From NCBI RefSeq assembly GCF_006345805.1, contig NC_043010.1, positions 6,076,001 to 6,140,000 on the forward strand: DNA of 64,000 nucleotides, read 5' to 3'. Position numbers and translations under genes: made by a program. Of this stretch, positions 384 through 62,494 are shown in pieces. Below the pieces are notes generated by a model that was not told where the DNA came from, did no database searches, and worked only from the letters and a program-made list of their open reading frames with translations. This DNA comes from Octopus sinensis. Lineage: Eukaryota. Numbering within the stretch: position 1 is the first letter of the stretch; each line of letters starts with the position of its first letter.

Positions 384-625
384 CAACAGTTGTCAGTTGT
401 TTATATTGTTCTTAATGAACTTTTTCAATGTTCTGGCAACACAAAGTTTTAATAGTGGCAGAAGTTCTGAGTAGTTTGGTATGTAATAGTTTTATATAGT
501 TCTATCAAGTTGGTTGTGTAGTGTGTAATGTGTGTTGTAGCCAATGACAAGCTGTCTTTTATTCCAATGCAGGGAAACGGAAATACAGCCTCCAACTTTT
601 GCAGTAAATGATGGGCAGACTCACA
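384..625 (-). promoter_or_regulatory. Promoter P0 plus non-coding exon 1 (about 384-468) of a protocadherin gene lying left of the window
   Basis: Minus strand: TATATAAAA (498-490) lies 30 nt upstream of an Inr-like TCAG (A at 468). CCAAT at 541-545 and 564-568. The ATG-free exon ends in TTG|GTAAGT (GT at 383-382). The same block recurs upstream of every gene in the array. Confidence 0.65.
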
Positions 626-2042
626 AAATATTTCACTTAGACACACTCATGTATAGATACATACATATACATGTGTGTGGTGAGAAGAAACCCAACTAAA
701 TGGATGGAAATATTAATAAAGTTTAAAGCAATGAAATATAAAATTAAAGTCTATTAAAAATAAATTACATTTTAATTTTAATGCATAAAAGTTATTTTCT
801 AACTTCAGTCAAAGTTATAAAACTTTTCATCTCAGATTTCTCTTTGACTTTTCAAAATTATCTGCTTGAGATAAACTTAATAAATGTTATTGAATAATAT
901 TTTTAGAAGTTAATTTCATTATAAAATTGTTGAGCTCATTTGAAAATACGAAATTATGGCTCCAAATAATTGTATTCAATAATGATTAGAAAATGGCCAC
1001 TTATTTCTAATGTTCCCTGTAGAAAATAAAAAGTATGAAATGGAAAATGTGTCTATGGAGTTTTCACATTTGAGACTTAACATAAATATCAATTAAAATT
1101 GATCTCAATTCATTTCTGTTACATTCTTATATCATATAGCTAATTATGTAAAAAAAAATTTTGTTCTTTTCTTTTCTTCTTTGGAAACTCCTAGTTTCCT
1201 TAACAACTAATCAATAATGCATATTCTTTATATTGTTTAGAAATGGTAAACTATGGCTGAATATTAAGAAACACATATGTATTTTGTATATTTTGATAAC
1301 AAGGGGAAATGCATTGCTTTTTCTGTACTTAAATGAAAGTTAATCTATTTATGATAGGGTAATTTCAATACTTGGCCTATCAGCAATGCGTTTTATAAAA
1401 TTCCCAGAAAGTATAATGGATAGATGTGTTATGTATTTTTGTATGGCTTCACGATGTATATCCAGATAGTGTAAGTATATATACTCTGATAGCTTCCAAA
1501 ACACGAATGGTTATAAGTTCCCCCCAAGCACACCTTGGTAGATATCAACTGGTCGTTTGGGAGGATATTTCACTCTTAAATGTACCAGTCACTCCAGATA
1601 TTTTGATAATTCCATTATATTTCCTTTTTCTTATTTCTTGGAGTCAATTAAAGATCAAATTTGAAAATATATGGATCATATATTTAAGGTTTATAACATT
1701 GGTATTATATAATTCTGGTCAGACATACTCTGAAGTATTTCTTGAGCAAGCATTATTGAAATACATTATGATTATTTTTTTTATATACTTTCATTCAAAA
1801 TATTCATTGTAATATACAAACTGTTATATAAATAAAAATTATTTTTGATATAGTTAATAATAAGATAAGCTTAAATCATGCAAACAAGTATAGAAGACCC
1901 TGGCAAATGATTGGCAAGGTCGTCTCCGGTGGGATATAATTTGAACTTAGTACACGAACAAGCATAGAATACGACCAAGTATTTAGTCACTCGGTATACT
2001 AGTTCTACATCTGTGAGCCATCTGTTTCTAAGTACTTTAGCA

Positions 2043-2362
2043 TTAGTTTTGTGGTGTAGGTAATGGCGGTACCTGAGCTAATGAAGATACCTTCGGTAGT
2101 GTTGCTACTTTTGGTACGGTTGTTAGGGGTGGCTTAGAGTATGGAATAAAGGCACTTGTCATTGGTTCTGAAAATGATTGTTCAGTTATGTCAATTGTGT
2201 TACCAGTTACAGTCAAGGGTATTTGGTCACGATTGCAAAAAGTATTATTGTCAACGTTTGGATAAGGATGTCGATCATTGTTATTTCCCCTTGATCTGTT
2301 GATTGTGTGTGGAAGTTGGTTTCTCCTGTTCCATGTGTGATCACTTTGATAAGGACACAAAT
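2043..2362 (-). CDS. Pcdh: Protocadherin gene 1, terminal coding exon (distal cytoplasmic tail, D-LCPYQSDHTWNRRNQ...VPPLPTPQN*)
   Basis: Acceptor tatttccAG at 2364-2363. Phase 1 joins the preceding exon's G to AT, giving GAT, and the frame is open to TAA at 2045-2043. A homologous exon is present in every unit. Confidence 0.8.
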
Positions 2363-3553: not shown

Positions 3554-3594
<41 letters not shown>

Positions 3595-4044: not shown

Positions 4045-4195
4045 CTGGCAGTTCCTCATAGTGTCCAGCACTGCCAACACTCCACCCATGACCACTATCA
4101 GTGAGAGATGACAATGTTGACATCTCAGTGAATTGGTCAGCACTATTTAGTTCTCTGTAACCTGGAGACATACTTTCTTCTCTTGGAACAAACAT
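4045..4195 (-). CDS. Pcdh: Protocadherin gene 1, 151-nt cytoplasmic exon (MFVPREESMSPGYREL...DSGHGWSVGSAGHYEELP)
   Basis: Acceptor tttctAG (4197-4196) and donor G|GTAAGT (4044-4043). Exactly 151 nt and conserved in all intact units while flanking introns diverge. Confidence 0.88.
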
Positions 4196-4510: not shown

Positions 4511-6889
4511 CTGTTGATTTTCTCTTAATCTGATCATTGGCATGGTTCTGTACTGAATATCTTCTCTATCTACCATTGGTTGTTGGGGTTTCTTCAGATT
4601 TCTCTCCACTGTGTACTGAACTCCAGGAGGAACACAGGTAGGATCAAATATATATTTTGATTGCACGTTTAATGCAGGTGTAACCTTGTGGTACATATCA
4701 ACACTGTTGTTATAGTTGTTGTCTGTCTGCTTCAGTCTATGAACTATACAGATCGATATAGAGATCACTATGACAACTGATACGATCACAGCTGCTATAA
4801 CAATAACAATCATCACATTCAATTGGAGACCATTACTTGATTCTGTTGTTGTCTTTGAAGGGGTCTTAAATATCTTTGATGTGCTGTTACTAACTGTGAG
4901 AGTCAAAGACAAAGTTGTTGTCGATGACAGAACTGGACTGCCACTGTCTTTCACACCTAATTCCAGTTCATAGAATCCAGCATCATTTTGGTAAAGTGAG
5001 CGAGAGAAAGATAAGACACCAGAGTGATGGTTCATTTGAAATAAGTGTTTCTCATTACCTCTGAGTATTTCATATGTGAGGAAGGCATTGTGTTGGCTGT
5101 CTCTGTCAGAGGCCCTAACAACTGTGATATCATGGTCAGAGTGGGGATGGTAGTGGACATTAAGACTGAAAGGGTCAGCATTAGGGAAACTGAAATAGGG
5201 AGCATTATCATTTAAATCCATAACCTCAACAACAACATTTGCTCTCTTCTCCAGTGATGGTGTTCCTTTATCTTTTACTAAAACCTTAAACTCATACAGG
5301 TTCTTTTCTTCTCTGTCTAGGGACTCAGTTGTGGAAATGAATCCCACATCAGATATCTGAAATGGTAGAATATCTTTTCCATTAGATAATAGAGAATAGG
5401 TTAATTGTCCTCCATCTCCAATATCTGGGTCTGTGGCATTGACATATCCAACAGGGAAGTCTTTGTGTTCATTTTCATAGGTGAGAAACTTAAATATGTC
5501 CTGACTAAACTGAGGTTGTACATCATTTATGTCAGTAACCAGCACAGAAAACCGTTTCTCTACTTTCAACGGAGGTAAACCATTATCTAGACATTTAATG
5601 GTGAAATTAAAGCTCTTCTCACTCTCTCTATCTATTTCACTCTTGACAACAACTTTGTATTTCTTTTCAGAAATTGAAATTAGCTGAAGATATCTGTTTT
5701 GTAAATGGCATTTCACTTGGCCATTTGCTCCATTGTCACTGTCAGTAACTTTGACATAGGCAACAAAACTGCCAATTTTAGATGCTTCTGAGATTGCAGC
5801 TGTGTTTCCCGTTGACTTAATGACAAATCTGAAGTCAATGTTTGGTGAATTGTTAATGTGACTGATACCATTTATGAAAACAGTGGCAATTGAGGACAAA
5901 GGCAGTTTACCATTATCTGTGGCTTTGACAAGTATTTTATAGGATTTTCCAAACTGAAATTCTGTTGTTACAAATAAGTCTCCAGTTACTCTGTTCAATT
6001 GAAAGCATTCTTTTATCTTATTCGGTGTTTTAGGACTGAGAGTATAAGAAATTTTTCCATTTCCCCCCATATCTAAATCTGTGGCAGAAAGTCTTAGAAC
6101 AGGTTTGTTTATCTGGTGTGTATCATTGATAGTGATGTTATAGATATTCTGGGAGAACACTGGGGAATTATCATTTTCATCTTGTACTGATATCATTATA
6201 TCCAGTACACCTTCCTTTTGCGGAGATCCCCCATTTCTTGCAATCAACTGAAAATTGTAAATGTCTTTTTTCTCACGATCTAAGTTGCCTTCCAAAGTTA
6301 GTTGCAGTAAATCTGTTCCATCTAATTCTTTAGAAACGAACAGTTTGAAAGGAATATCTTCACCTTTTTTAAGCTGATATACAAGTTTAGAATTTTGAGT
6401 ACTGACATCATTGTCGATGGCTTTTGGAATTCTTCCTTTTGAGCCTTTTGAATCACTTTCATCAAATGTTAAATGAAATTCTTTGTTTGGGAAAATAGGA
6501 TAATTATCATTGACATCTTCTATTACAACTTTGATTTCTAATATTTTCATAAAAGAATGGCCTTCTTGAACTGCTATTTCCAATATCCTGAAACATTCCA
6601 CATTATATTGACAAAGAGATTCTGCATCCAATATGGCAGCTGTGTACAGTTGTCCTCCAGGTGTAACATTAAATAACTGAACACCTCCATCAGTACCACC
6701 CTGGAGTACATTAAATGTCAGTTTGTTGCTATCATCTCGAGTCTGTATATTATCCAGTAAATGTGTATCACTGACAATATCTCCAATGAAGCTGTGTACA
6801 TCATTATTCTCTTTTATATGGTAGATATGATCCACACACCGGCAGCTGTTAGCCATCAGCACCACAATCAACAATATCACTGAAATCAT
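4511..6889 (-). CDS. Pcdh: Protocadherin gene 1, large exon: signal peptide, EC1-EC6, TM, juxtamembrane (793 codons; spliced protein about 949 aa)
   Basis: Cadherin motifs DxNDNxP, LDRE and AxDxG. EC1 CX5C (LCQYNVEC), no Trp2, hydrophobic TM. True ATG at 6889 lies 7 nt after a poly-T acceptor (AG 6898-6897). The exon ends CAG|GTAAGA at 4511. The symbol is family-level only. Confidence 0.95.
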
Positions 6890-7730
6890 CTTCGATCTGA
6901 AAAAAAAATTTTTGATTAAAGTTTGTATATACAAATGTGAATCTAATAAATGTAAAGAAAAAATTTCTTTAACATTTAGTGCCTTTACATTCTTCTCTAA
7001 ATTCTATTTAGTTTCAGCTATTTAATCCAAATTTTTAGTTTTGCATACAACTGAACACACACACACACAATATATATATATATATATATGTATAATATAT
7101 TATGTGTGTGTATGTGTATATGTATATATATATATATATAATGCATTTCCATATATATGCATGTGTTTATATATATGTAGATAGATAGATAGATAGATGT
7201 GTGTGTATGTGTCCCATACTTAGAAATATATTTGAGATAAGCATTATATAATGCAAGCTGTATCTGATTTGACTTATTCTTCACATGTATCTTTTATTTG
7301 GTATTTAAATTAAGGTATCTCAGAATTACATTCAGAAGAATTCTAATAAATTTTCTCCAAGATTCAGAGAGCAATTAACTTACATAATTATAACACCCCT
7401 TGGAATCTGAAAGCTTTAAATTTGTATCAAATTTCTCAGCATCCCATATATTTTGTTGGAGGTACAATTTCAACAGAAAGAAAGGGTAACCACAGATGAT
7501 AAACTAAGGTGAGAGAGAGAGAGAGTATGGTGACACTATGGAGGAGGAAATGGAGATGGGAAAGGTTGTGCTAGAAGGAATGAGAAACAGTATAGGTGGA
7601 GTACAATGAGAGAGGGTGGAACGACTGGATAATACGAGACTGTAGTGGCATTTATGTGTTTGTTCATAAGGGAGAGTTGATTAGTTGGTGTTTATAGAAA
7701 TTGTTGCTGGCAAAGGAGTACTATGGAAAC

Positions 7731-8892: not shown

Positions 8893-9945
8893 TGTATAAT
8901 AAAGAGCACACATAAACACAAACATAGAGAAGCAGATAGATAGATAGATCGACCATGTATAATAACACATGTAAATTGAATTTAACTCGTATCTGACAAT
9001 GAATACACAAATGTTAAACAAAGTAATCAATATACACAAAGATTAATGATACGAATAAAAACTAAATATAAAGCCTCTGAAAACACTTTTCTCACCTGAA
9101 TCTAACAGAACTCATTAGATTTTGAGATTACTTAGAATATTAGTACACGCACAATTAGTGTTGAATCTTATGTTAATTGACTCCAAGTCAACCATGATCA
9201 ACAATTGTTGATCCCTATACAACTCAACTAAATGTCTCCTGCCCATTCGAATGACGAAGAGAGTGGGATTCGAGTGAGGTATGGGTGTTATTTTCGATAA
9301 TCACGTTATGGGTCTATCGTTGGGTCACTAAGAATAAATTGTCTCGCAATGTTAGGAAAATTAGCTGTTATTTCTAACAGTCCCAATAACCACATAACGG
9401 CTCGATCGTTGGTTCATTAGAAGTAATCTCCCTTGATGATGAATCTGCCTAAGCTATCATTTTAAATTAAAAACAACCTACTGGAAATAGACTATGCTAT
9501 ATTTTAAAATGAATCGAAAAAAAAGAAAAAAAGAAAAAGAAAAGAAAAATAAATTAACGTAATCTACATCTTGTAATAATTACGCTTATACCCTATCATT
9601 ATTAACTTATATTCTAACTAAATATGACTTGATTGAGAAATATTGTATAAAACAAATACAGTAAATATTTTGATGGATGTAAATAGCTACATATATTTAT
9701 TTTTTTTGAAATAATGGTAAATTGAATGTGTTCTTTCAAAAAATTAATTTTAAATACTTCTTGAAAATGTATTTCGAACAATTAACAAAAGATCACAAAA
9801 AAAAAATCAACAAAATTATTATTCAGGAAGTACTAATCTGATATATACTGATGTAGTTTTACAAAGATGGTTGGTAACAAGGAGAGATAAACAAATATTT
9901 AAAGAACCAATTTACTTAGCAAAATAACTTTTAATAAGTACTTAC

Positions 9946-10180
9946 CAACAGTTGTAAGTTGTTTATACAGTTGTTACTGTGTTATTACAGTGTTCTGGTA
10001 ACAAAGTTGTAGCAATAGTTCTGAGTAGTTTGGTATGTAATAGTTTTATATAGTTCTCTCAAGTTCGTTGTGTAGTATGTAATGTGTGTTGTAGCCAATG
10101 ACAAGCTGTCTATTATTCCAGTGCAAGGAAACGGAAATACAGCCTCCAGTTCTTGCAGTAAATAATAGGCTGACTCACAA
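9946..10180 (-). promoter_or_regulatory. Promoter P1 plus non-coding exon 1 (about 9946-10022) of gene 1
   Basis: TATATAAAA 10052-10044, Inr-like A at 10022, CCAAT 10095-10099, TGACTCA 10171-10177, donor GT 9945-9944. This supplies the upstream exon required by the acceptor at 6898. Confidence 0.7.
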
Positions 10181-11055
10181 AATATTTCACTTAGACATAC
10201 TCATATTTAGATGCATACATATACATGTGTGTGGTGAGAAAGTACACAACTAAATGGTTGAAAATAAGTTTTAAAGCTATGAAATATAAAATATCATATT
10301 TTAAAACTATGTTTGATTTTAATTTTAAGAGAAAAAAATTATTTTCTAACTTCAGTCAAAGTTACAAAACTTTTTATCTGAACTTCCACTTTGGTTTTAC
10401 AAAATTATCTGCTTGAGACATCCTTAGAAATTGAAATTAAATGATATTTTGATGTATTGATTTCATAAGATAAGCATTGATCTCATTTGAAAATATGTAA
10501 TTATGGCTCCAAATAATTATGTTGAATGATGATTAGAACAGGAGTAATTCTTATTTGTATTCCTAGATGAGAACTAATACTTTTGAAAAGGAAATAAATC
10601 TTTGTAAATTTCACATTTGAAACCTAAAATAAATATCCATTAAAATCGAAGCTTCTTCATTAAAAGAAGATCTGAATTCATTTCTAATATATTCATTTGT
10701 CATGTATTCAATTTTCTATATTTTTCATTTCTGTCCACTTATTTCTTTTTTTATATTTTGTTGGTCTTGGAAACTCCCATTTCACTTATCAACAAATCAA
10801 TGTTGCATATTGTTTTAACATAGTAAATTATTCTTGAAAATTTGGACACAGTGTTAAGTCTTCTGTTTATTTTTACAACGTATCAAAAATATTTCAAAGA
10901 AAGAAATTATCATTGCCATTTTTTAACTTAAATAGAAATGTTTCTATTTCAGATTGGTTATAATTTCCATATTTTATCTTATCGGCAATGATTCTAACAT
11001 GAAAATGCCCAGAGAGTATAAAGAATAGGTGTGTTATATATTTCTTGCATGGCTG

Positions 11056-11107
<52 letters not shown>

Positions 11108-11716: not shown

Positions 11717-12009
11717 TTAGATATGCGATGTCGATAGAGGAGGTACCTCAGGTATTGTTGTTACTTTAGGTACAGCTGGTAGAGGTGGTTTACAGATAGA
11801 AGTGAAGGCACTTGTCATTGGTACTGAAGATGGTTGTTCACTTATATTGGATGTGGTCCCAGTTATATTCAAAGGTATGTGGTCGAGGTGACTAGAATTG
11901 TTAACATTTGGTTGATAGCAATAATTGTTATCTCCCCTCGATCGTTTGAGTGTGTGTGGAAGTTGATTTCTCCTATTCCATGTGTGATCACTTTGGTAAC
12001 GACACAGAT
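11717..12009 (-). CDS. Pcdh: Protocadherin gene 2, terminal coding exon (D-LCRYQSDHTWNRRNQ...VPPLSTSHI*), missed by the ORF track
   Basis: Acceptor tatttccAG 12011-12010. Hand translation in phase 1 is open to TAA at 11719-11717 and is homologous to the gene 1 terminal exon. Confidence 0.8.
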
Positions 12010-13891: not shown

Positions 13892-14042
13892 CTGGCAGTT
13901 CCTCATAATGTCCAGCACTACTGACACTCCAGCCATGACCACTATCAGTGAGAGAGCACAATGTTGACATCTCATTGAATTGGTCAAAACTGTTTAATTC
14001 TCTGTAACCCGGAGCCATACTCTCTTCTTTTGGTACAAACAT
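13892..14042 (-). CDS. Pcdh: Protocadherin gene 2, 151-nt cytoplasmic exon
   Basis: Acceptor AG 14044-14043, donor GTAAGT from 13891, 151 nt. Encodes MFVPKEESMAPGYREL...DSGHGWSVSSAGHYEELP. Confidence 0.88.
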
Positions 14043-47311: not shown

Positions 47312-47552
47312 CAACAGTTGTTAGTGGTTTATACACTTGTTACTGTATTGTTTCAGTGTTCTGGTAACAAAGTTATAGAACTAGCAGAAGTTCTGAGTAG
47401 TTTGGTATGTGACAGTGTTATGTAGTTCTATCAAGTTGGTTTGTGTAGTATGTAATGTGTGTTGTAGCCAATGACAAGCTGTCTATTATTCCAGTGCAAG
47501 GAAACGGAAATACAGCCTCCAGTTCTTGCAGTAAATGATGGGCTGACTCACA
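47312..47552 (-). promoter_or_regulatory. Promoter P5 plus non-coding exon 1 (about 47312-47394) of gene 5
   Basis: Donor GT 47311-47310, Inr-like A at 47394, TACATAACA at -30, proximal CCAAT retained, TGACTCA 47544-47550. Confidence 0.65.
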
Positions 47553-48437
47553 AAATATTTCACTAAGACACACTCATGTATAGATACATACATATACATG
47601 TGTGTGTGGTGAGAAGGTACCCAACTAAATGGATGGAAATATTAATAAGGTTTTAAGTAATGAAATATAAAATTAAAGTATATTAAAAATATATCATATT
47701 TTAATTTTAATACATAAAAGTTCTTTTCTAACTTCAGTCAAAGTTGCAAAACTTTTTATCGTATATTTACGTCTGGTTTTATAAAATATTTGGCTTGAAA
47801 CATCCTTAATAAATGTTATTATATAATATTTTTAGAAATTAATTTCATCATAAAATTGTTGAACTCATTTGAAAATACGAAATCATGGCTCCAAATAATT
47901 GTGTTGAATAATTATTGCAATATGGTTTGTTCTTACAAGTGTTCCTATAACAGAACTAATTCTTTTAAAATGGAAATAAAAATTTGTAAATTTCACATTT
48001 GAAACTTAACATAAATATTTATCAAAATAGAAGCCTATCCATTAAATGTCATTACACATGGAATTCCTTTCTGATACATATATAAATATATAAAATGTAT
48101 CTAATTTTCTTTTATTCTTTTTGCCCACCTTTTTGGAAAGCTAATCAATAATGCATATTTTTTATATTGCTTTGAAATGGTAATCTAATGCTGAAAATTT
48201 AGAAACAGAGTAAAGTATTTTGTATACTGTGACTACATAACAAAAATACTTTTAAGGAGAAGAAATATTGCTTTTCCAGGGCTTAGATAAAACTGTTTCT
48301 TTTTAAGTTAGGTTAACTATTAAAATTATGCAATTTTCAATAGATTTCATAAGAAAATGTCCAGAAACTACAATGGAGAATTGTGTTATATATTTTTTAG
48401 TATGGATTCCCTATGTATATATATATCCAGATATCTT

Positions 48438-49208: not shown

Positions 49209-49531
49209 TTAGTTCTGTGGTGCTGATAGAGGTGGTACTTGAGGTATTGAAGGTACCTTTGGTAATGTTGTTACTTTAGGTACAGCTGGTAGAAGCGGTT
49301 TACAGTTTGAAATAAAGGCACTTGTCATTGGCACCGTCGATGATGGTTCAGTTGTATTAGATGTGGTCCCAGCTGTAGTCAAAGGTATTTGGTCGAGATG
49401 ATAAGAAGGGTTCTTGTCAACATTTGGTTGGTAGGGATATCCATTGCTGTTATCTCCCCTTGATCTGTCGAGGGTGTGTTGAGGGTGGTTTCTCCTATTC
49501 CATGTATGATCACTTTGATAACGACATAGAT
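49209..49531 (-). CDS. Pcdh: Protocadherin gene 6, terminal coding exon
   Basis: Acceptor AG 49533-49532, 323 nt, TAA 49211-49209. Confidence 0.8.
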
Positions 49532-50852: not shown

Positions 50853-51003
50853 CTGGCAGTTCCTCATAGTGTCCAGCACTGCCGACACTCCATCCATGAC
50901 CCCTATCAGTGCGAGATGACAATGTTGACATCTCACTGAATTGGTCAGAACTGTTTAGTTCTCTGTAACCTGGAGACATACTCTCTTCTCTTGGAACAAA
51001 TAT
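50853..51003 (-). CDS. Pcdh: Protocadherin gene 6, 151-nt cytoplasmic exon
   Basis: AG 51005-51004, GTAAGT from 50852, 151 nt. Confidence 0.88.
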
Positions 51004-51383: not shown

Positions 51384-53777
51384 CTGTTGATGCAGTTCAG
51401 TGAAAGATGGGTTACCCCAGCTATCATACGATATAGTTCTGCAGTGAATATCTTCTCTGTCTACCATTGGTTGTTGGGGTTTCTTCAGATTTCTCTCCAT
51501 TGTGTACTGAACACCAGGAGGAACACAGGTAGGATCAAATATATATTTCGGTTGGATGTTTAATGCAGGTGTAACCTTGTGGTACATATCAACACTGTTG
51601 TTATAGTTGTTGTCTGTCTGCTTCAGTCTATGAACTATACAGATTGATATAGAGATCACTATGACAACTGATACGATCACAGCTGCTACAACAATAACAA
51701 TCATCACATTCAATTGGAGACCATTACTTGATTCTGTTGTTGTCTTTGAAGGGGTCTTAAATATCTTTGATGTGTTGTTACTAACTGTTAGAGTCAAAGA
51801 CAAAGTTGTTGTCGATGACAGAACTGGACTGCCACTGTCTTTCACACCTAATTCCAGTTCATAGAATCCAGCATCATTTTGGTAAAGTGAGCGAGAGAAA
51901 GATAAGACACCAGAGTGATGGTTCATTTGAAATAAGTGTTTCTCATTACCTCTGAGTATTTCATATGTGAGGAAGGCATTGTGTTGGCTGTCTCTGTCAG
52001 AGGCCCTAACAACTGTGATATCATGGTCAGAGTGGGGATGGTAGTGGACATTAAGACTGAAAGGGTCAACATTAGGGAAACTGAAATAGGGAGCATTATC
52101 ATTTAAATCCATAACCTCAACAACAACATTTGCTCTCTTCTCCAGTGATGGTGTTCCTTTATCTTTTACTAAAACCTTAAACTCATACAAGTTCTTTTCT
52201 TCTCTGTCTAGGGACTCAGTTGTGGAAATGAATCCCACATCAGATATCTGAAATGGTAGGATATCTTTTCCATTAGATAATAGAGAATAGGTTAATTGTC
52301 CTCCATCTCCAATATCTGGGTCTGTGGCATTGACATATCCAACAGGGAAGTCTTTGTGTTCATTTTCATAGGTGAGAAACTTAAATATGTCCTGACTAAA
52401 CTGAGGTTGTACATCATTTATGTCAGTGACCAGCACAGAAAACTGTTTCTCTACTTTCAATGGAGGTAAACCATTATCTTGACATTTAATGGTGAAATTA
52501 AAGCTCTTCTCACTCTCTCTATCTATTTCACTCTTGACAACAACTTTGTATTTCTTTTCAGACATTGAGATAAGCTGAAGATATCTATTTTGTAAATGAC
52601 ACTTCACTTGTCCATTTGCTCCACTGTCATTGTCGGTAACTTTGACATAAGCAACAAAGCTGTTAATTTCAGTTGCTTCTGAGATGATGGCAGTGTTGCC
52701 AGTTGACTTTAAAACAAATCTGATATCAATATTTGGTGGATTGTTTAAGTAACTGATTGCATTTATTAGAACAGTAACAGTTGAGGACATAGGTGGTTTA
52801 CCATTATCTGTGGCTTTAACAAATATTTTATAGGATTTTCCAAACTGAAACTCTGTTGTTAGAAATAGTTCTCCAGTTTGCTTATTCAGTCGAAAGCATT
52901 CTTTCATATTACTTGGTGTTTTAGAACTTAAGCTGTAGGAAATTCTTCCATTTTCTCTTTCATCCAAATCTGTCGCAGACAGTTTTAAAATAGATTCGTT
53001 AATCCTGTGTGTATCATTTACAGTGACATTGTAAATATTGTGAGAGAACACTGGGGAATTATCATTTTCATCTTGTATTGATATTTCTAAATTTAGTACC
53101 CCTTTCTTTGTTGGAGTACCCCCATCTATTGCAATTAACTGGATGTTGTAAATGTTTTGTGTTTCACGGTCCAAGTTACCATCTAAAAGCACTTGTAACA
53201 AATCACTTCCATCCAATTTCTTAGATACAAACAATTGGAATGGAATATCTTCATCCTCTTTGAGTTGATAAGTAAGTCTAGAATTCTGAATACTGACATC
53301 TTTGTCAATGGCATTTGGAAGTGTTTCTTTTCTTCCTTTTAATGCAGTTTCATCAAACTGTATATGAAATTCTTTGTTTGGAAATATAGGGTAATTATCA
53401 TTGACATCTTCTATCATAACTTTGATTTCTAATATCTTGAGAAAAGAATGGCCATGCTGAACAGCTATTTCCAAATCCCTGAAACATTCCACATGATATT
53501 GACAAAGAGATTCTGCATCCAATATGGCAGCTGTGTATATTTGTCCTCCAGGTGTAACATTAAATAACTGAACACTTCCATCAGTACTACCCTGGAGTAT
53601 TTTAAATGTCAGTTTGTTGCTCTCATCCTTAGTCTGTATATCATCCATTAAGTGTGTATCAGTGACAATATCTCCAATATAGCTGATTATATCATTGTTC
53701 TCTTTCACATGGTAGGTATGATCCACACACCAGCAGTTATGAGCAAGGAACAACACCAACAATACACCTGGAAACAT
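51384..53777 (-). CDS. Pcdh: Protocadherin gene 6, large exon (798 codons; spliced protein about 955 aa)
   Basis: Six EC repeats plus TM. ATG 53777, acceptor AG 53786-53785, donor CAG|GTAAGA at 51384. Confidence 0.95.
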
Positions 53778-56059
53778 TTTCAATCTGAAATAGAATTTTG
53801 TATTGATATCAATTATTCAGGTTTTAATACTACAGAGAAATTCTAACTAGAAATTTTGTTACATGAACTTTATCTTTACATTCATTTTGGATTTGTAGAT
53901 TTTTAAGAAACTTGAAAGTGTGTATAGAAATGTTCTCTTTAATTTTTTGGATATAATTGATGCATATGTAGTTGTTATACACCCAAACCAAGAAATAACC
54001 CATTGATATTGCAGAGGACAGGTGTAAATTGTTCTCTGTTTTCTTTTCTATACGACTTCACCTAATATAAAAGAAGAGGTATTTCATCACCGTTGCCCTC
54101 TTGTTAACAGCTTTATCAATTTACTTATACAAACTTACATATTCTACACATGCTTGGTAGCTCAGTTAAATAAATTATTGAAGCATTACCAATTTTTGCT
54201 GTATATGCTATAATATACAACTGAGTTCAAGTTGGAGTTTGAACTGGCATTGCATGTGTGAACTAAACGAAAGTAAACATGTGGTACAGCTGTGAACATG
54301 TGGCTTTGTTTATAAACCACATGTATGTCAAATTGGCTGCTGGTGAAATTGTAATGATGACTAAAACCACAATCCAAGTAATTTCTCTTATTTTTGCATT
54401 TGGTAAAGTAAACAAAGAGCTCTATCTAAAATTGTGAAGATACAGTGCTGGCTAAAATCTATAGATTTTTTTTTGTGTTGTATACTGTAGCATTAAATAT
54501 TTAAGATATAAATGATAATGCATGCACACACATGTATAGGAATGAGTTTGTGGATATGTGTGTGTGTGTGTCTGTATGCACGTGCGTGCACATCATGTAA
54601 AGTGTTGTGACCATATTGCCTTAATAAAGAAAATTATAAGCGTGGTATATCAAGAAATTAACCTGACACTGAATTTATATAGAGAGCAGATTTAATATTT
54701 TTTTGTAATGTCTTCTTTCAGGTTGATATGGCTGTTTTGTCTGAGTTATATTATTTCCTTTTTACAAGTTACAGTAATTGTATTGTAGTCAAGGATATTT
54801 CTTAGGCTATATTGATCCTGATATTTGAAGAACTTCACAAGACACAAAAAGTAGTCTGAGGCTCAAAAGGAAATAAATGAAGTGGAACAAAATACCACCA
54901 ACATACATATTGGTGTGAAATGGATGGCTAGTTCTATCAGAGAGCTGCACAGTTTCCACTGGTCGAATTTTTTTAACAAGGCTATGGACAACATCCATCT
55001 ATGACACAAGACTGTTGCCCATGTTTTCTGACTGTCTTATTCAACATATTTGACCAATAATCATGTTCTCCAGAAAAAAAAAATTATTGATCACACAGCC
55101 ATGTCTGAGTCCAATATGTTGATCACTGAGTTACTTCTCACTATGAAAATATCTTACCAAACGATTCCCATTCCCCAGAATATCCATCATTCCATTGTTT
55201 CCGTATCTTCCCTACACCAATACAGTCATAACTGAATACAAGAATGTCTCTGTGTGACATCCTTGGTGACAAAGTCTCATCTTTAAAATGACAATTTCAT
55301 ATACACTTGTTCTGAAGATATCATGCCATTGCATCAATTCTCCTGATATTACATATCTGAATACGAATCTAAAAGAGACATTAAGAATGGCAACTAATTG
55401 ATGTGTAACACCAGCGAACCACTGACCAAATGAAAGGCACTCAAACTAAGAACTTCACGTTCTTTTAAAAGTATTCTATGCCAGCATGGAAAGTAGACGT
55501 TCAATGCTGATGATGATTTCTTGAATATCATAAGATGCAGTATTTCTAATCTGAAGTGTGTGATTTTGATAGATATCTGGCTGCTATTTCTAGCAAGTCC
55601 GAGAATTCATTAAGGGTATTAATTTATTAAGAGTAACCTCCCTTACTTTCAAAACTACTTCATGGTCCAATTTCTCAGATATTGAATTTAACAATCTTGT
55701 GAGAGCAAGATAGTCAAATATTTTGCAATGTAAAGTAAAAACTTGATAAACTATTCAACTAACGTTAACTAAAACAATTATCATCAATACATCCCGTCTA
55801 TTACATCCAAATCTATCAGCTAATCCTATGCTAGATGGTTAAACTGACAGTATTGTAAAAAAGAGAGAGAAAACATTATATTTTTTTAAAGAATGTAAAT
55901 ATTAAAATAATGCTAAACTCTGTTTGTGTTTTGGTGAAAGTTCCATCTCAAGTATTTATTGAAGATATATATAAAATGTCTTTAGAAAATGACATTGCTG
56001 TACAGGAAGTAATTAAGAATCTGATTTTGCTATGGGTGTAGTTTTAGCAAGATGGTAGT

Positions 56060-57230
56060 CAATGGGAAGTGAAATGACCAAACACCAACAGAAACAATTT
56101 ATACAGCAGAATAACTTTTAATAAGTACTTACCAACAGTTGTCAGTCGTTTATACACTTGTTACTGTATTGTTTCAGTGTTCTGGTAACAAAGTTATAAA
56201 CTAGCAGAAGTTCTGAGTAGTTTGGTATGTGACAGTGTTATGTAGTACTATCAAGTTGGTTGTGTAGTATGTAATGTGTGTTGTAGCCAATGACAAGCTG
56301 TCTATTATTCCAATGCAAGGAAACGAAATACAGCCTCCAGTTCTTGCAGTAAATGATGGCTGACTCACAGACTATTTCACTTAGACACACACTCATATAT
56401 AGATACATACATATACATGGTTGTGCGTGGTGAGAAGGTACCCAACTAAATGGATGGAAATATTAATAAGGTTTTAGTAATGAATATAAAATTAAAGTAT
56501 ATTAAAAATATATCATATTTTAATTTAATGCATAAAAGTTATTTTCTAACTTCAGTCAAAGTTGCAAAACTTTTATCTTATATTTTCCTCTGGTTTTATA
56601 AAATTTTTGCTTGAAACATCTTTAATAAATGTTACTAAATAATCAATGGGAAGTGAAATGACCAAACACCAACAGAAACAATTTATACAGCAGAATAACT
56701 TTTAATAAGTACTTACCAACAGTTGTCAGTCGTTTATACACTTGTTACTGTATTGTTTCAGTGTTCTGGTAACAAAGTTATAAAACTAGCAGAAGTTCTG
56801 AGTAGTTTGGTATGTGACAGTGTTATGTAGTACTATCAAGTTGGTTGTGTAGTATGTAATGTGTGTTGTAGCCAATGACAAGCTGTCTATTATTCCAATG
56901 CAAGGAAACGGAAATACAGCCTCCAGTTCTTGCAGTAAATGATGGCTGACTCACAGACTATTTCACTTAGACACACTCATATATAGATACATACATATAC
57001 ATGTGTGCGTGGTGAGAAGGTACCCAACTAAATGGATGGAAATATTAATAAGGTTTTAAGTAATGAAATATAAAATTAAAGTATATTAAAAATATATCAT
57101 ATTTTAATTTTAATGCATAAAAGTTATTTTCTAACTTCAGTCAAAGTTGCAAAACTTTTTATCTTATATTTTCCTCTGGTTTTATAAAATTTTTTGCTTG
57201 AAACATCTTTAATAAATGTTACTAAATAAT
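56060..57230. repeat. Direct tandem duplication (period 584 bp) of the gene 6 promoter plus exon 1 (P6a exon about 56133-56214; P6b exon about 56717-56799)
   Basis: CAATGGGAAGTGAAATG...GTTACTAAATAAT occurs twice back to back (junction about 56643/56644). The donors are at 56132 and 56716. Confidence 0.9.
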
Positions 57231-57838: not shown

Positions 57839-57871
<33 letters not shown>

Positions 57872-58612
57872 CTAGTGGATGTTAAATGATGATGATGATA
57901 TTTATATATATCCTGACAGTTTCAGTAATATACATGGTTATAAGTTTCTCAGTAAAAACTTTGGTAGATATCAACTGGTAGTTTGGGAGAATATTTCATT
58001 CTTAACTGTTCCCCTCATTCAAAATATTTTGATAATTCTGTCATATTTTCTTTTGATGATTCCTTGGTGTAAATATATTTACTTCGATTAAAGACTAAAT
58101 AAGAAAAAAAATTATCTATTTTGGTGAAAATTTATCATAAATTTATAACTTTAAGAAATGTTATGACAATGTTATATAATTTCTTGATCAAATATTAATA
58201 TTCTTTTTTACTCTAGGCACAAGGCCTGAAATTTTGGGGGAGGGGGCCAGTCGATTAGATCGATCCCAGTCAATTTATCAACCCCAAAAGGATGAAAGGC
58301 AAAGTCGACCTCAGTGGAATTTGAAATCAGAATGCAATTATAATTACCTTTCATACTTTCACACTGAGATATTTGTAGTAATATACAAGGTCTACTTTTA
58401 TATAAGATAAAATCATTTTTGGTATTGTCTCTAGTAAGGGGAGGAAGTAATAATTATGTAAGCTGCTAAAGAAGACTGGCAAATAATTGGCAAAGTCATC
58501 TGTGGTAGAATATGATTGAAATTAGTACACAAATATAAAATACGGTCAGGATTTTAGGCAGTCCTTGTTCTAGTTCTGCTGCTACCTGTCATTGGTTTCT
58601 AAATAGGCAGCA

Positions 58613-61600
58613 TTAGTTGTGGGTGCTGATAGAGGTGGTACTTGAGGTATTGAAGGTACCTTTGGTAATGTTGTTACTTTAGGTACAGCTGGTAGAAGCG
58701 GTTTACAGTTTGAAATAAAGGCACTTGTCATTGGCACCGTAGGTGATTGTTCAGTTGTATTAGATGTGGTCCCAGCTGTAGTCAAAGGTATTTGGTCGAG
58801 ATGAAGAAGGGCTCTTGTCAACATTTGGTTGGTAGGGATATCCGTTGTTGTTATCTCCCCTTGATCTGTCGAGGGTGTGTTGAGGGTGGTTTCTCTATTC
58901 CATGTATAATCACTTTGATATCGACATAGATCTGGATGGAAGTATATCGATTTATTGGCTGTTTTTTTTTTTCAGGCAAACTGAATAAAAGCAAACTGGT
59001 TTAAATGGGTTTATAGCAAGGAAAAATCAAAGCATTAGTATATTTTAACAAAAAAAAAAGCTATGCCCCAGCTATCCTGTCTAGAGTGAGCGCCATGCAC
59101 TGTGATATCTTGGGATTCAAGGGTCCACAGCTATTTAATGTCTCGTCCAAACATCTCAGGGATCTTCATGGAGTGGAGTAGATGTTTTCCAGGAATAACT
59201 TGACCTCTTGCTATCCACTGTCCCAGATGAAACTGTATTACAGCAGGAAACTCAGTAGAGAGCAAACAGTGTTGGACTCCTTCCATCACTAAAAGCAAAT
59301 CATGTAAGATTGGCCATTGTAAACATGATTTCAGCCTTAGCACAGAATCGTATAAATAAATAAATAATTCCGTTCAGGTAAAACGGTCATGAAATAATCT
59401 GCCTCCAAAGAATTCTATTCAACCCATGTTAGTCTTCCAAAGTGGATTGGATTGAAAAAGGATGATGATGATGGTAACTAAATATAGACCAATAGATTAT
59501 CATACTATATTGAAGAAATATTTATTTTCACTTACCTGGCAGTTCCTCATAGTGACCAGCACTGCCGACACTCCATCCATGACCCCTATCAGTGCGAGAT
59601 GACAATGTTGACATCTCACTGAATGGTCAGAACTGTTTAGTTCTCTGTAACCAGGAGACATACTCTCTTCTTTGGAACAAATATCTAAATACAAATATAT
59701 AGATTCAATGTATCATCATAATGTTAAGGGCATTCCAAAAAATATATGCGTAGAGAAACATCCACCTGTCCCATATATTACATGCACACTCATATAAGAG
59801 TGCATCATAGTGTCATCAATATTTCGAAATAGAAATGCATAAAATTGAAATAAGACAAAATATTGACCATACTTAGACCATACTTAGAAAACAAGAAAGG
59901 ATATAATTTACAACAAGAAAGGATATAATTTACAATAAGAGCTAGAAATAAAAGATCCATGAATTTAAGGAAATCATATTTAATAAGAAATACCAGAACA
60001 AAATATTACTCTGCAAACAACTCGTGATCAACCATTCAAACAACTGGTAATTAACTGTCTTACCTGTTGATGTGGCTCAGTGAAAGCTGGGTTACCCCAG
60101 CTATCATATGATATAGTTCTGCAGTGAATATCTTCTCTGTCTACCATTGGTTGTTGGGGTTTCTTCAGGTTTCTCTCCATTGTGTACTGAACTCCAGGAA
60201 GAACACAAGTTGGATCAAATATATATTTCGGTTGTACGTTTAATGCAGGTGTAACCTTGTGGTACATATCAACACTGTTGTTATAGTTGTTGTCTGTCTG
60301 CTTCAGTCTATGAACTATACAGATTGATATAGAGATCACTATGACAACTGATACGATCACAGCTGCTACAACAATAACAATCATCACATTCAATTGGAGA
60401 CCATTACTTGATTCTGTTGTTGTCTTTGAAGGGGTCTAAATATCTTTGATGTGGTGTTACTAACTGTGAGAGTCAAAGACAAAGTTGTTTGTCGATGACA
60501 GAACTGGACTGCCACTGTCTTTCACACCTAATTCCAGTTCATAGAATCCAGCATCATTTTGGTAAAGTGAGCGAGAGAAAGATAAGACACCAGAGTGATG
60601 GTTCATTTGAAATAAGTGTTTCTCATTACCTCTGAGTATTTCATATGTGAGGAAGGCATTGTGTTGGCTGTCTCTGTCAGAGGCCCTAACAACTGTGATA
60701 TCCTGGTCAGAGTGGGGATGGTAGTGGACATTAAGAGTGAAAGGGTCAACATTAGGGAAACTGAAATAGGGAGCATTATCATTTAAATCCATAACTCAAC
60801 AACAAACATTGCTCTCTTCTCCAGTGATGGTGTCCTTTATCTTTTACTAAAACCTTAAACTCATATAGGTTCTTTTCTTCTCTGTCTAGGGACTCAGTTG
60901 TGGAAATGAATCCCACATCAGATATCTGAAATGGTAGAATATTTTCCATTAGATAATAGAGAATAGGTTAATTGTCCTCCATCTCCAATATCTGGGTCTG
61001 TGGCATTGACATATCCAACAGGGAAGTCTTTGTGTTCATTTTCATAGGTGAGAGAAACTAAAATGTCCTGACTAAACTGAGGTGTACATCATTTATGTCA
61101 GTAACCAGCATAGAAAACTGTTTCTCTACTTTCAATGGAGGTAAACCATTATCTTGACATTTAATGGTAAATTAAATCTCTTCTCTCTCTCCCTATCTAT
61201 TTCACTCTTGACAACAACTTTGTATTTCTTTTCAGACTCTGAGATAAGCTGAAGATATCTGTTTTGTAAATGGCACTTCACTTGTCCATTTACTCCATTG
61301 TCATTATCGGTAACTTTGACATAAGCAACAAAACTATGAATTTGAGTTGCTTCTGAGATGACAGCTGTTTTTCCAGTTGACTTAATGACAAATCTGAAGT
61401 CAATGTTTGGTGGATTGTTAAGATGAGTGATTCCATTTATTAGAACAGTAACGATTGAGGACATAGGTGGTTTACCATTATCTGTGGCTTTAACAAACAC
61501 TTTATAGAATCTTCCAAACTGAAATTCTGTTGTTAGAAATAGTTCTCCAGTTACTTTATTCAACCGAAAACATTCTTTTATCTTATTAGGTGTTTTAGTA

Positions 61601-62395
61601 CTAAAAGTATAAGAAATTCTTTGATTCTCTCCAATATCCGAATCTGTTGCAGACAATCTTAGAACAGGTATGTTTGTCTGGTGTGTATCATTGATAGTGA
61701 TGTTATAGATATTCTGGGAGAACACTGGGGAATTATCATTTTCATCTTGTACTGATATCATTATATCCAGTACACCTTCCTTTTGCGGAGATCCTCCATC
61801 TCTTGCAATCAACTGAATATTATAAATGTCTTTTTTCTCACGATCTAAGTTGCCTTCCAAAGTTAGTTGTAGTAAATTGCTTTTTTTAGGCTGATATCTT
61901 CACAAGAGAATTGTGAGTACTGACATCATTGTCCGTGGCTTTTGAATTCTTCCTTTTGAGCCTTCTTTCATCAAATGCTAAATGAAATTCTTTGTTGGGA
62001 AAAATGGGAGAATTATCATTGACATCTTCTATTATAACTTTGACTTCTAATATCTTTATAACAGAATGGCCATGCTGAACAGCTATTTCTAACATTCTGA
62101 AACATTCCACATTATATTGACACAGAGTTTCTGCATCCAATATAGCAGCAGTGTATATTTGTCCTCCAGGTGTAACATTAAACAACTGAACACCTCCATC
62201 AGTACTATCCTGGATTACATTAAATATTAGTCTGCTGCTATCACCCCGAGATGGTACAGTATTCAGCAGTTGTGTATCAGTGGCAATATCTCCAATATAG
62301 CTGTGTCTATCATTGTTCTCTTTCACATGGTAGACATGATCCACACACCAGCAACTTCCAGAAAGAAACAACACCAACAATACAACTGGACTCAT
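58613..62395 (-). pseudogene. Pcdh: Protocadherin gene 7, frameshifted as assembled (large exon 60064-62395, middle exon 59536-59684, terminal exon about 58613-58931); pseudogene or low-quality consensus
   Basis: All splice sites and the ATG are intact, but there are more than 10 one- to two-nt indels and a scrambled, deleted segment at about 61870-61910. The ORF track breaks it into four pieces. Confidence 0.7.
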
Positions 62396-62494
62396 TTTCT
62401 ATCTGAAATAGAGTTTTATATCAATATTCATAATTCAAAATTTAATAAATGCAAAGAAAATATGAAAATTTTGCTACATGTGTAGATATTTATG

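What the first reader, a model, noticed from the sequence alone, without database searches (positions are those of the whole stretch)
384..62402. Array of self-contained 4-exon protocadherin genes whose splice junctions are all mutually frame-compatible
Seen: each unit has its own promoter, ATG-free exon 1, a large exon with the acceptor 7 nt before the ATG and a phase-0 CAG|GT end, a 151-nt exon (phase 0 to 1) and a terminal exon. Established: vertebrate clustered Pcdhs splice variable exons to shared constant exons, and the octopus expansion (Albertin et al. 2015) is an independent tandem expansion. Inference: because phases are identical and genes sit only about 1.4-2 kb from the next promoter, read-through transcripts could splice in frame across genes. 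An upstream ectodomain could join the distinct tails of gene 2 or gene 1, or an upstream exon 1 could join a downstream large exon. That would give a combinatorial isoform code without dedicated constant exons.
Basis: partly seen in the sequence, partly recalled or inferred. Interest (0 to 1): 0.72.

Follow-up and report, generated by a model that had tools for sequence, protein, structure and literature searches.

The report
Octopus protocadherin tandem gene array
This is a known, already annotated tandem array of seven near-identical protocadherin (neuronal adhesion) genes on an Octopus sinensis chromosome, six intact and one dead; their exon frames match because they are recent copies of one another, and hybrid splicing across genes is hinted at by database gene models but is unproven and would add little protein diversity.

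Summary
The window is identical to Octopus sinensis CM016872.1:6,076,001-6,140,000. It holds seven head-to-tail protocadherin units on the minus strand. Six are intact; U7 is a frameshifted pseudogene. Each unit has a promoter-like block, an ATG-free exon 1, a large exon whose acceptor lies 7 nt before the ATG and which ends CAG|GT in phase 0, a 151-nt exon and a terminal exon. The U5 splice product equals RefSeq XP_036365121.1 exactly. All 56 collinear exon combinations are open and in frame, but paralogues inherit their intron phases, so this shows nothing beyond common descent.

RefSeq holds one cross-unit model (XP_036365150.1: U6 large exon plus U4 terminal exon) and one 6653-aa fusion (XP_029644520.2). 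Styfhals et al. 2022 corrected read-through PCDH "gene fusions" on this assembly. A likely poly(A) signal lies only about 275 nt before the next TATA-like element. However, junction flanks differ at 0-5 of 75 nt among U3-U6, so short-read artefacts are plausible. U4-U6 tails are 96% identical. Two junctions of the fusion model are non-canonical. The field's stated view is that cephalopods have no shared exons.

Most likely these are independent genes, and any chimeras are noise.

The parts
358..717 (-). Promoter-like block and exon 1 of the next unit downstream (U0). Exon 1 ends at 384 (donor TTG|GTAAGT). A TATA-like element (TATATAAAA) lies at about 490-498. The U0 large exon is outside the window.
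771..776 (-). Conserved ATTAAA, the likely poly(A) signal of U1. Equivalent sites start at 10323, 19472, 28459, 38047, 47705 and 57108 for U2-U7. It is the only AATAAA/ATTAAA hexamer conserved between the stop codon and the next promoter.
2043..2362 (-). U1 terminal exon, coding part (stop codon at 2043-2045). A likely 3'UTR continues down to about 750.
4045..4195 (-). U1 exon 3, 151 nt, phase 0 to 1.
4511..6896 (-). U1 large exon (ATG at 6889, acceptor 7 nt upstream, donor CAG|GTAAGA).
9919..10266 (-). U1 promoter-like block and exon 1 (donor after 9946).
11717..12009 (-). U2 terminal exon, coding part.
13892..14042 (-). U2 exon 3, 151 nt.
14330..16733 (-). U2 large exon (ATG at 16726).
19052..19413 (-). 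U2 promoter-like block and exon 1 (donor after 19078).
20331..20383 (-). Small exon with canonical AG/GT sites inside the U3 3'UTR zone. RefSeq XP_029644520.2 uses it to link U3 to the U2 large exon, bypassing the U2 promoter and exon 1.
20820..21166 (-). U3 terminal exon, coding part. A 1-nt deletion near the end changes the last residues.
21450..21520 (-). Cassette exon inside U3 intron 3 that the RefSeq fusion model uses (ttttag|TG...CA|GTAGAT).
22511..22661 (-). U3 exon 3, 151 nt.
23042..25445 (-). U3 large exon (ATG at 25438).
28040..28400 (-). U3 promoter-like block and exon 1 (donor after 28067; TATA-like element at about 28179).
29791..30113 (-). U4 terminal exon, coding part. It is the 3' end of the cross-unit RefSeq model XP_036365150.1.
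31452..31602 (-). U4 exon 3, 151 nt.
31989..34389 (-). U4 large exon (ATG at 34382). The ORF is intact, but no RefSeq CDS on record contains it.
37628..37988 (-). U4 promoter-like block and exon 1 (donor after 37655).
39985..40307 (-). U5 terminal exon, coding part.
41619..41769 (-). U5 exon 3, 151 nt.
42159..44562 (-). U5 large exon (ATG at 44555). E2+E3+E4 of U5 equals XP_036365121.1 exactly.
47285..47646 (-). U5 promoter-like block and exon 1 (donor after 47312).
49209..49531 (-). U6 terminal exon, coding part.
50853..51003 (-). U6 exon 3, 151 nt.
51384..53784 (-). U6 large exon (ATG at 53777). From the internal Met at 53417 it forms the 5' part of XP_036365150.1.
56106..57049 (-). U6 promoter-like block and exon 1 in two copies from a 584-nt tandem duplication (56106-56467 and 56690-57049; donors after 56133 and 56717).
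58582..62402 (-). U7, a pseudogene. Terminal exon about 58582-58931, exon 3 about 59536-59685, large exon 60064-62402. All three carry frameshifting indels, and part of intron 3 is deleted.

Best explanation
The window is part of the octopod-specific tandem expansion of protocadherin genes, at Octopus sinensis CM016872.1:6.076-6.140 Mb.

Each ~9-kb unit is a complete gene, laid out as follows:
- a conserved promoter-proximal element with AP-1-like TGAGTCA, ETS-like ACTTCCG, a CCAAT box and a TATA-like box;
- a short non-coding exon 1;
- one large exon encoding the signal peptide, six cadherin repeats, the transmembrane helix and the start of the tail;
- a 151-nt exon;
- a terminal exon with a 3'UTR of about 1.3 kb.

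The identical intron phases are inherited from the duplicated ancestor. Part of the array grew by duplication of a two-unit block.

Protein diversity lies in EC1-EC4 of the large exon. The 3' half of that exon and the tails are kept nearly identical. The several-fold drop in synonymous divergence there points to gene conversion. Each gene therefore carries its own copy of a quasi-constant region instead of splicing to shared constant exons.

Which units a neuron expresses is most likely set by promoter choice (inferred). Because the likely poly(A) signal lies only about 275 nt before the next TATA-like element, polymerase probably runs into the next unit quite often (inferred). Occasional cross-unit spliced RNAs are then expected as in-frame by-products. 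Some of the cross-unit database models may also be read-mapping artefacts.
For: Identity and structure.
- The window is identical to the O. sinensis record, and the U5 product equals XP_036365121.1.
- Splice sites and phases were read directly from the sequence.
- Every intact unit keeps open tail exons.

Promoter and exon 1.
- There is one copy of the promoter/exon-1 block per unit, and two for U6.
- A 23-nt core is invariant in O. sinensis, O. vulgaris, O. bimaculoides and Argonauta hians, and the exon-1 donor is invariant too.
- A RefSeq exon ends at the homologous exon-1 donor in a downstream unit and splices to that unit's large-exon acceptor.

3'UTR and spacing.
- Sense-strand AATAAA/ATTAAA hexamers between the stop codon and the conserved ATTAAA number 7. 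The expected count is 50.4 +/- 7.3, and the antisense strand has 42.

Sequence evolution.
- pS is 0.23-0.36 in codons 0-440 and 0.04-0.05 in codons 440-660.
- N-terminal identity alternates: U3~U5 92% and U4~U6 91%.

Literature.
- Albertin et al. 2022 (PMC9068888) report full gene duplication, no shared final exons, and homogenisation by gene conversion.
- Styfhals et al. 2022 (PMC9712504) report read-through transcripts that gave PCDH gene fusions, corrected by hand, and about 19 PCDH genes expressed per cell.
Against: - The transcription start, the poly(A) site and independent promoter use are inferred from conservation and motif statistics. No RNA data were examined.
- The seven units are paralogues, so the hexamer-depletion statistic is not seven independent observations.
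- Cross-unit models exist in two annotation sets (RefSeq for O. sinensis, the ENA submission for O. vulgaris), and Argonauta hians has a 1906-aa double-unit model. Chimeric RNAs might therefore be commoner than 'noise'.
- Another Pcdh gene shows the same alternative 3' isoforms, with a gene range above 200 kb, in two species. Long-range splicing from the large-exon donor does seem to occur in this family.
Confidence: 0.8

Rival explanations
1. Read-through pre-mRNAs are spliced across units in a regulated way: large exon of unit i to exon 3/4 of a downstream unit j, or exon 1 of unit i to the large exon of unit j. The array would then produce a functional combinatorial set of isoforms without dedicated constant exons.
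For: - All 56 collinear combinations are open and in frame, giving 52 distinct proteins.
- All donors are strong and identical in type.
- The gap between the likely poly(A) signal and the next promoter is about 275 nt.
- XP_036365150.1 consists of the U6 large exon plus the U4 terminal exon.
- The U3-to-U2 link in XP_029644520.2 uses canonical sites.
- O. vulgaris CAI9732431.1 adds the tail exons of a promoter-less truncated unit to the upstream gene.
- Read-through fusions are reported by Styfhals et al. 2022.
Against: - No transcript data were examined.
- Each donor has its own strong acceptor 287-389 nt (intron 2) or 1.3-1.9 kb (intron 3) away, so within-unit splicing should win.
- U4-U6 tails are 96% identical, so swapping them changes almost nothing. 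Only the U1 and U2 tails differ.
- Short reads cannot reliably tell units apart at the junctions, which differ at 0-5 of 75 nt. Heavy A-to-I editing in cephalopod neural RNA (my own knowledge) makes this worse.
- Two junctions of the 6653-aa model are non-canonical.
- The tail exons of the promoter-less orphan unit show no clear constraint between O. sinensis and O. vulgaris. E4' changes at the neutral rate and carries a stop codon in O. sinensis.
- The published view is that there are no shared exons.
Confidence: 0.07
2. The cross-unit and fused gene models are purely computational artefacts. They would arise from multi-mapped spliced reads and protein-alignment chaining among 92-95% identical paralogues. 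On this view no chimeric RNA exists at all.
For: - Junction flanks among U3-U6 differ at 0-5 of 75 nt.
- In XP_029644520.2 the U2-to-U1 and U1-to-U0 introns start with TA immediately before the stop codon.
- XP_036365150.1 starts at an internal Met, and the intact U4 large exon is left unannotated.
- Fused multi-unit models also appear in Argonauta hians and on an unplaced O. sinensis scaffold, which is typical of pipeline behaviour in repeats.
Against: - Styfhals et al. 2022 attribute the fusions to read-through transcripts in an annotation that drew on full-length Iso-Seq and FLAM-seq as well as short-read data.
- The U3-to-U2 link uses four canonical splice sites, including small exons that have no paralogous template.
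- The tight spacing makes some read-through likely.
Confidence: 0.3
3. The array is a disguised vertebrate-type cluster. The tail exons of the most downstream units (U1, U2 or beyond) would act as the real constant exons, and the other units' tails would be decaying relics.
For: - The U1 and U2 tails are the most divergent.
- U3's tail has a frameshift near its end.
Against: - U1-U6 all keep open exon 3 and exon 4 with intact splice sites.
- RefSeq's U5 model uses its own tail.
- The next units downstream, covering 55 kb in L004, also each have their own tail exons.
- The same self-contained layout is kept in Argonauta hians and O. bimaculoides.
Confidence: 0.03

Closest known systems
Octopod tandemly expanded protocadherin clusters (Albertin et al. 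2015 and 2022; Styfhals et al. 2019 and 2022)
   Same: This is that system. The units are head-to-tail, multi-exonic protocadherin genes on the Pcdh-rich O. sinensis chromosome. The best hits are octopod Pcdhs, and one unit is identical to XP_036365121.1.
   Different: Nothing differs in kind. The promoter core, the poly(A) spacing, the exact exon phases, the U7 pseudogene and the 5'/3' gradient in synonymous divergence did not turn up in the papers I could read.
Vertebrate clustered protocadherins alpha and gamma (variable exons spliced to three shared constant exons; Chen and Maniatis 2013)
   Same: Both are tandem arrays of large exons that each encode the whole ectodomain, the transmembrane helix and the start of the tail. 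In both, each such exon follows its own promoter with a conserved element. In both, the membrane-proximal part is homogenised and the distal cadherin repeats are diversified.
   Different: There are no shared constant exons here. Every unit has its own exon 3, exon 4 and 3'UTR. A non-coding exon 1 precedes the large exon. The promoter core is unrelated in sequence to the vertebrate CSE, and no CTCF-type site was established.
Vertebrate protocadherin beta cluster
   Same: Both are tandem, self-contained genes with no constant exons and with gene conversion among paralogues.
   Different: Beta genes are single-exon genes with short tails. These units have four exons and a tail of about 150 aa encoded separately.
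Conjoined genes / transcription-induced chimeras between tandem neighbours
   Same: In both, same-strand neighbours with a short poly(A)-to-promoter gap give models in which an upstream donor joins a downstream acceptor and the intergenic region is removed as an intron.
   Different: Here the partners are paralogues with identical phases, so chimeras stay in frame and look like normal family members. That makes them both more translatable and harder to tell from mapping artefacts.
Chelicerate sDscam clusters with alternative promoters and RNA-pairing-assisted trans-splicing (PMC9258826)
   Same: Both are tandem 5' cassettes of a neuronal recognition receptor. The sDscam case is a precedent for extra isoforms made by joining cassettes from different transcripts.
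   Different: sDscam cassettes share downstream constant exons. No pairing elements that promote cross-unit joining were shown here. The only such feature is an inverted SINE-like pair around U5, whose role is unknown.

Membership tests
Protocadherin (cadherin superfamily) | Several tandem extracellular cadherin repeats, usually six or seven. | tested here: met
   Pfam finds Cadherin PF00028 in 5 stretches (E about 1e-69) plus the N-terminal Cadherin_2 PF08266 and a Cadherin_CELSR2_9th-like domain.
Protocadherin (cadherin superfamily) | Type I membrane protein: an N-terminal signal peptide and a single transmembrane helix after the last repeat. | tested here: met
   Read from the translations: a hydrophobic N-terminus (MFPGVLLVLFLVHNCWC) and the stretch LNVMIVIVVAAVIVSVVIVISISICIV followed by HRLKQ. 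No dedicated predictor was run.
Protocadherin (cadherin superfamily) | Ectodomain and transmembrane helix encoded by one large exon. | tested here: met
   A single ~2.4-kb ORF per unit runs from the ATG to a CAG|GT donor.
Octopod tandem protocadherin expansion | Head-to-tail array of complete, multi-exonic paralogues whose closest relatives are octopod Pcdhs. | tested here: met
   Seven same-strand units. The top hits are Octopus and Argonauta Pcdhs. The window is identical to the O. sinensis record and one unit to XP_036365121.1. The layout is shared with O. vulgaris, O. bimaculoides and A. hians.
Vertebrate-type clustered Pcdh (variable/constant architecture) | Variable exons splice to a single set of shared constant exons at the 3' end of the cluster. 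| tested here: not met
   Each of U1-U6, and the units in the 55 kb downstream, has its own exon 3 and exon 4. Albertin et al. 2022 state the same.
Vertebrate-type clustered Pcdh (variable/constant architecture) | Each variable exon has its own promoter carrying a conserved sequence element. | tested here: inconclusive
   There is one conserved ~360-nt block per unit with a 23-nt invariant core, TATA-like and CCAAT motifs, conserved as far as Argonauta. Promoter activity was not measured. The sequence is unrelated to the vertebrate CSE.
Conjoined genes / read-through chimeras | Transcripts that contain exons of two or more adjacent same-strand genes. | not testable with these tools
   Only gene models and a Methods remark are available: XP_036365150.1, XP_029644520.2, CAI9732431.1, CAI9732435.1 and Styfhals et al. 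2022. No reads were accessible.
Conjoined genes / read-through chimeras | Cross-gene junctions use canonical splice sites. | tested here: inconclusive
   The U3-to-U2 link has canonical AG/GT at all four new sites. The U2-to-U1 and U1-to-U0 links of the same model are non-canonical, with an intron starting TA at the stop codon.

The most novel reading that the evidence does not exclude
Polymerase regularly reads through the ~275-nt gap between one unit's poly(A) signal and the next promoter. The resulting pre-mRNAs would be spliced across units in a regulated, cell-type-dependent way. Examples are the U6 ectodomain with the U4, U2 or U1 tail, or an upstream exon 1 driving a downstream large exon. 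The octopod array would then partly behave like a vertebrate variable/constant cluster although it has no dedicated constant exons, contrary to the current statement that cephalopods do not use such splicing.
Probability: 0.07. Interest if true: 0.8.

Novelty: already known. Interest (0 to 1): 0.33.

Why it matters
Octopus protocadherins are the textbook case of a neuronal recognition family that expanded independently of vertebrates. How octopus neurons turn about 170 genes into cell identity is still open.

If cross-unit splicing were real and regulated, it would overturn the accepted 'whole-gene duplication only' picture and add a new route to isoform diversity.

As things stand, the practical value is more modest:
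1. The RefSeq models over this array are unreliable: a 6653-aa fusion, a U6/U4 chimera and an unannotated intact U4. They will distort expression counts.
2. The exact exon map, the unit-diagnostic positions and the likely poly(A) and promoter sites given here make the question directly testable with public Iso-Seq and FLAM-seq data.
3. The conserved promoter core is a concrete candidate for the element that governs promoter choice.

Tried and rejected
1. I searched the 5.8-billion-protein collection with the U5 tail for RNA-derived chimeric fragments. It returned only tail-only partial models and two short Logan fragments that start in intron sequence. None was a chimera.
2. I tested whether the tail exons of a promoter-less truncated unit downstream (L004:69263-71650) are under constraint between O. 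sinensis and O. vulgaris. E3' has 1 change in 151 nt and E4' has 10 in 311, against a neutral rate of 3.2%. E4' also carries a stop codon in O. sinensis. There is no clear constraint and the power is low.
3. I tried to read Albertin et al. 2015. It is not held.
4. I tried to fetch the >200-kb Pcdh gene of XP_029644501.1 / XP_014774850.1. The DNA is not returned for such a long range. Its alternative end exons are not in any locus I hold.
5. I looked by eye for a CTCF-like site in the promoter core. The match is poor, so I make no claim.
6. Rfam, tRNA and tandem-repeat scans of the window found nothing relevant.
7. The distant Pcdh locus L007 lacks the promoter core, so the element is specific to this subfamily as far as tested.
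8. I did not use the bacterial promoter/terminator scanner because it does not apply to an animal genome.
9. I rejected the idea that identical phases are evidence of selection for cross-splicing. They are inherited.

Full report
**What is there.**

The window carries seven long ORFs on the minus strand at a spacing of 8.6-10.2 kb. A self-comparison shows ~9-kb tandem units that are 87-95% identical among the upper five. The two lowest are more diverged in non-coding DNA, at about 75%. The ORFs encode cadherin repeats, and their best relatives are octopod protocadherins.

The sequence is byte-identical to Octopus sinensis CM016872.1:6,076,001-6,140,000. I number the units U1 (lowest coordinates, most downstream in the direction of transcription) to U7.

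**Check of the observation.**

All the structural claims hold.
- In all seven units an AG acceptor lies exactly 7 nt before the ATG.
- The six intact large exons end CAG|GTAAG or CAG|GTGAG after a complete codon.
- Tails of annotated octopus homologues map to a 151-nt exon (ag|...CCAG|gtaagt, phase 0 to 1) and to a terminal exon starting ccag|AT.
- Splicing these three coding exons gives open 946-964-aa products for U1-U6. The U5 product is exactly RefSeq XP_036365121.1.

An alignment of the seven regions between one unit's stop codon and the next unit's ATG shows a ~360-nt block that is 89-100% identical in every unit. The block ends in AACTGTTG|GTAAGT at 384, 9946, 19078, 28067, 37655, 47312, 56133 and 56717. 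A TATA-like element sits about 117 nt upstream of the donor, and there is no ATG in the ~85 nt before it. Coordinate 62402 is the first base of U7's large exon.

The ~110-nt core of the block contains TGAGTCA, ACTTCCG and CATTGGCTA. This core and the donor are almost invariant in O. bimaculoides and in Argonauta hians, whereas the exon-1 body between them is free to vary. That pattern is what a promoter-proximal element plus a used splice donor would show. In a downstream unit, a RefSeq exon ends at the homologous donor and joins that unit's large-exon acceptor.

- U7 is a pseudogene, with at least ten frameshifting indels in the large exon and further indels in exons 3 and 4.
- U3 has a 1-nt deletion near the end of its tail.
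- U6 has two promoter/exon-1 copies from a 584-nt tandem duplication.

**The intergenic space.**

That stretch looks like 3'UTR, however.
- On the sense strand it holds only 7 AATAAA/ATTAAA hexamers over the seven units. The expected count is 50.4 +/- 7.3, and the antisense strand has 42.
- The only hexamer conserved in all seven units is an ATTAAA 1.27-1.94 kb after the stop and about 275 nt before the next TATA-like element.

I infer a 3'UTR of about 1.3 kb and a very short gap between poly(A) signal and promoter. This makes polymerase run-on into the next unit plausible. It is an inference; no 3'-end data were available.

**Frame compatibility.**

All 56 collinear combinations E2(i)-E3(j)-E4(k) with i >= j >= k are open and in frame. 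This is true but uninformative, because recent tandem duplicates inherit their intron positions and phases. N-terminal identity alternates (U3~U5 92%, U4~U6 91%), which points to duplication of a two-unit block.

**Does cross-unit splicing happen?**

I could not look at reads, so the evidence is indirect and mixed.

In favour:
- RefSeq XP_036365150.1 (835 aa) consists of the U6 large exon from an internal Met, an exon 3, and the U4 terminal exon (100% identity to 30120-29794). Its gene range (53417-29791) encloses all of U5 and skips the intact U4 large exon.
- RefSeq XP_029644520.2 (6653 aa) strings together U3, U2, U1 and four more units.
- Its U3-to-U2 link runs from exon 3 through a cassette in intron 3 (21520-21450) and a small exon in the U3 3'UTR zone (20383-20331) to the U2 large-exon acceptor. 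All of these sites are canonical.
- In O. vulgaris, CAI9732431.1 splices from a CAG|GT inside exon 4 to the tail exons of a truncated downstream unit. CAI9732435.1 splices from AAG|GT inside exon 4 to a small exon about 770 nt into the next gene's intron 1, that is, beyond the next promoter.
- Styfhals et al. [quoted passage not shown]

Against:
- The U2-to-U1 and U1-to-U0 junctions of the 6653-aa model begin with TA right at the stop codon. They cannot be genuine introns.
- Among U3-U6 the 75 nt on either side of each junction differ at only 0-5 positions. Short spliced reads can easily be placed across the wrong units.
- Each donor has its own strong acceptor 287-389 nt or 1.3-1.9 kb away.
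- The tail exons of the promoter-less truncated unit show no clear constraint.
- Albertin et al. 2022 state that cephalopods do not splice multiple first exons to shared final exons.

**Would it matter for the protein?**

Little, within this array. The U4, U5 and U6 tails are 96% identical, U3 is 87-88% identical to them, and only U1 and U2 are distinct at 65-73%.

The real pattern of diversity lies inside the large exon. Mean pairwise synonymous difference is 0.23-0.36 over codons 0-440 (EC1 to about EC4). It falls to 0.04-0.05 over codons 440-660. A drop at synonymous sites indicates homogenisation by gene conversion, not only protein constraint. Albertin et al. 2022 suggested this in general terms for cephalopods, and it is known for vertebrate clusters (Noonan et al. 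2004, cited). Each gene thus carries its own copy of a quasi-constant membrane-proximal and cytoplasmic region. The array works like a variable/constant design but reaches it by concerted evolution, not by splicing.

**Verdict.**

The frame argument carries no weight, the gain in diversity would be small, and the supporting models are partly demonstrable artefacts.

My estimates:
- that some chimeric RNA exists at a low level: about 0.5-0.6;
- that it forms a regulated isoform code: about 0.07.

The question is cheap to settle with existing long-read data and the exon map given here.

Noticed in passing
window 573-595, 10127-10149, 19267-19289, 28254-28276, 37842-37864, 47500-47522, 56904-56926 (minus strand); L001, L005, L006: The 23-nt core CTGGAGGCTGTAYTTCCGTTTCC sits inside a ~110-nt element with AP-1-like, ETS-like and CCAAT motifs, about 180-290 nt upstream of each exon-1 donor. 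It is exact in O. sinensis, O. vulgaris, O. bimaculoides and Argonauta hians, and absent from a distant Pcdh locus. It is a candidate octopod counterpart of the vertebrate Pcdh promoter CSE. A literature search found no description of it.
   Followed up: partly
window 56106-57049: A 584-nt tandem duplication gives U6 two complete promoter/exon-1 copies with intact donors (after 56717 and 56133). The copy nearer the gene has a 1-nt deletion in the conserved core.
   Followed up: partly
window 58582-62402: U7 is a pseudogene, or possibly a badly polished stretch of the assembly. It has at least 10 frameshifting indels in the large exon, indels in exons 3 and 4, and a deletion of about 0.7 kb in intron 3.
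   Followed up: yes
window 31989-34389: The U4 large exon is an intact ORF, but no RefSeq CDS on record contains it. It lies inside an 'intron' of the U6/U4 chimeric model XP_036365150.1. The canonical U4 and U6 products are absent from the protein collection.
   Followed up: yes
window 39388-39789 versus 34657-35079, 44829-45247, 8388-8600, 63323-63719: A SINE-like element of about 400 nt sits in intron 1 of several units. One inverted copy is inserted in the U5 3'UTR. It is 85-92% complementary to the intron-1 copies of U5 and U4, about 5 kb away on either side. In a pre-mRNA or read-through RNA these could pair and form an editing substrate or a looping element. Their role is unknown.
   Followed up: partly
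window, large exons (codons 0-440 versus 440-660 of each unit): Synonymous divergence among the units drops from 0.23-0.36 to 0.04-0.05 at about codon 440. This is the signature of gene conversion homogenising EC5, EC6 and the transmembrane region while EC1-EC4 stay diverse.
   Followed up: yes
window, between each stop codon and the conserved ATTAAA (e.g. 28465-29790): The sense strand is strongly depleted of AATAAA/ATTAAA hexamers: 7 observed, about 50 expected, 42 on the antisense strand. This implies 3'UTRs of about 1.3-1.9 kb that end about 275 nt before the next TATA-like element.
   Followed up: yes
outside the window: the gene of XP_029644501.1 (O. sinensis) and XP_014774850.1 (O. bimaculoides): A different Pcdh gene has a RefSeq gene range of 280 kb in one species and 218 kb in the other. 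Both species show the same set of isoform lengths (948, 815, 807, 805 aa). All isoforms diverge directly after the large-exon donor (...THQ|). Long-range alternative 3' splicing from the large-exon donor may be conserved there. The DNA could not be fetched.
   Followed up: partly
L004:69263-71650 (O. sinensis, about 34-36 kb downstream of the window) and L002:17093-19485 (O. vulgaris): A truncated unit keeps only the last ~150 codons of the large exon plus exons 3 and 4. It has no promoter block of its own. Both annotations attach its tail exons to the upstream gene. E4' evolves at the neutral rate and carries a stop codon in O. sinensis.
   Followed up: partly
L005 (Argonauta hians BAAFZT010000037.1:29166228-29190156): The orthologous Argonauta array has the same exon layout at a spacing of about 7.8 kb, with the promoter block only 0.55-0.9 kb after the stop codon. 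Its annotation also contains a 1906-aa double-unit fusion.
   Followed up: partly
window 27277-27321 and 36844-36888 (minus strand): A small exon-like segment about 750 nt into intron 1 of U3 and U4 has the acceptor ttttag|. It is homologous to the last coding exon (ICIQICNIRRVDTVA*) of O. vulgaris CAI9732435.1, which is reached from a donor inside the upstream gene's exon 4.
   Followed up: partly
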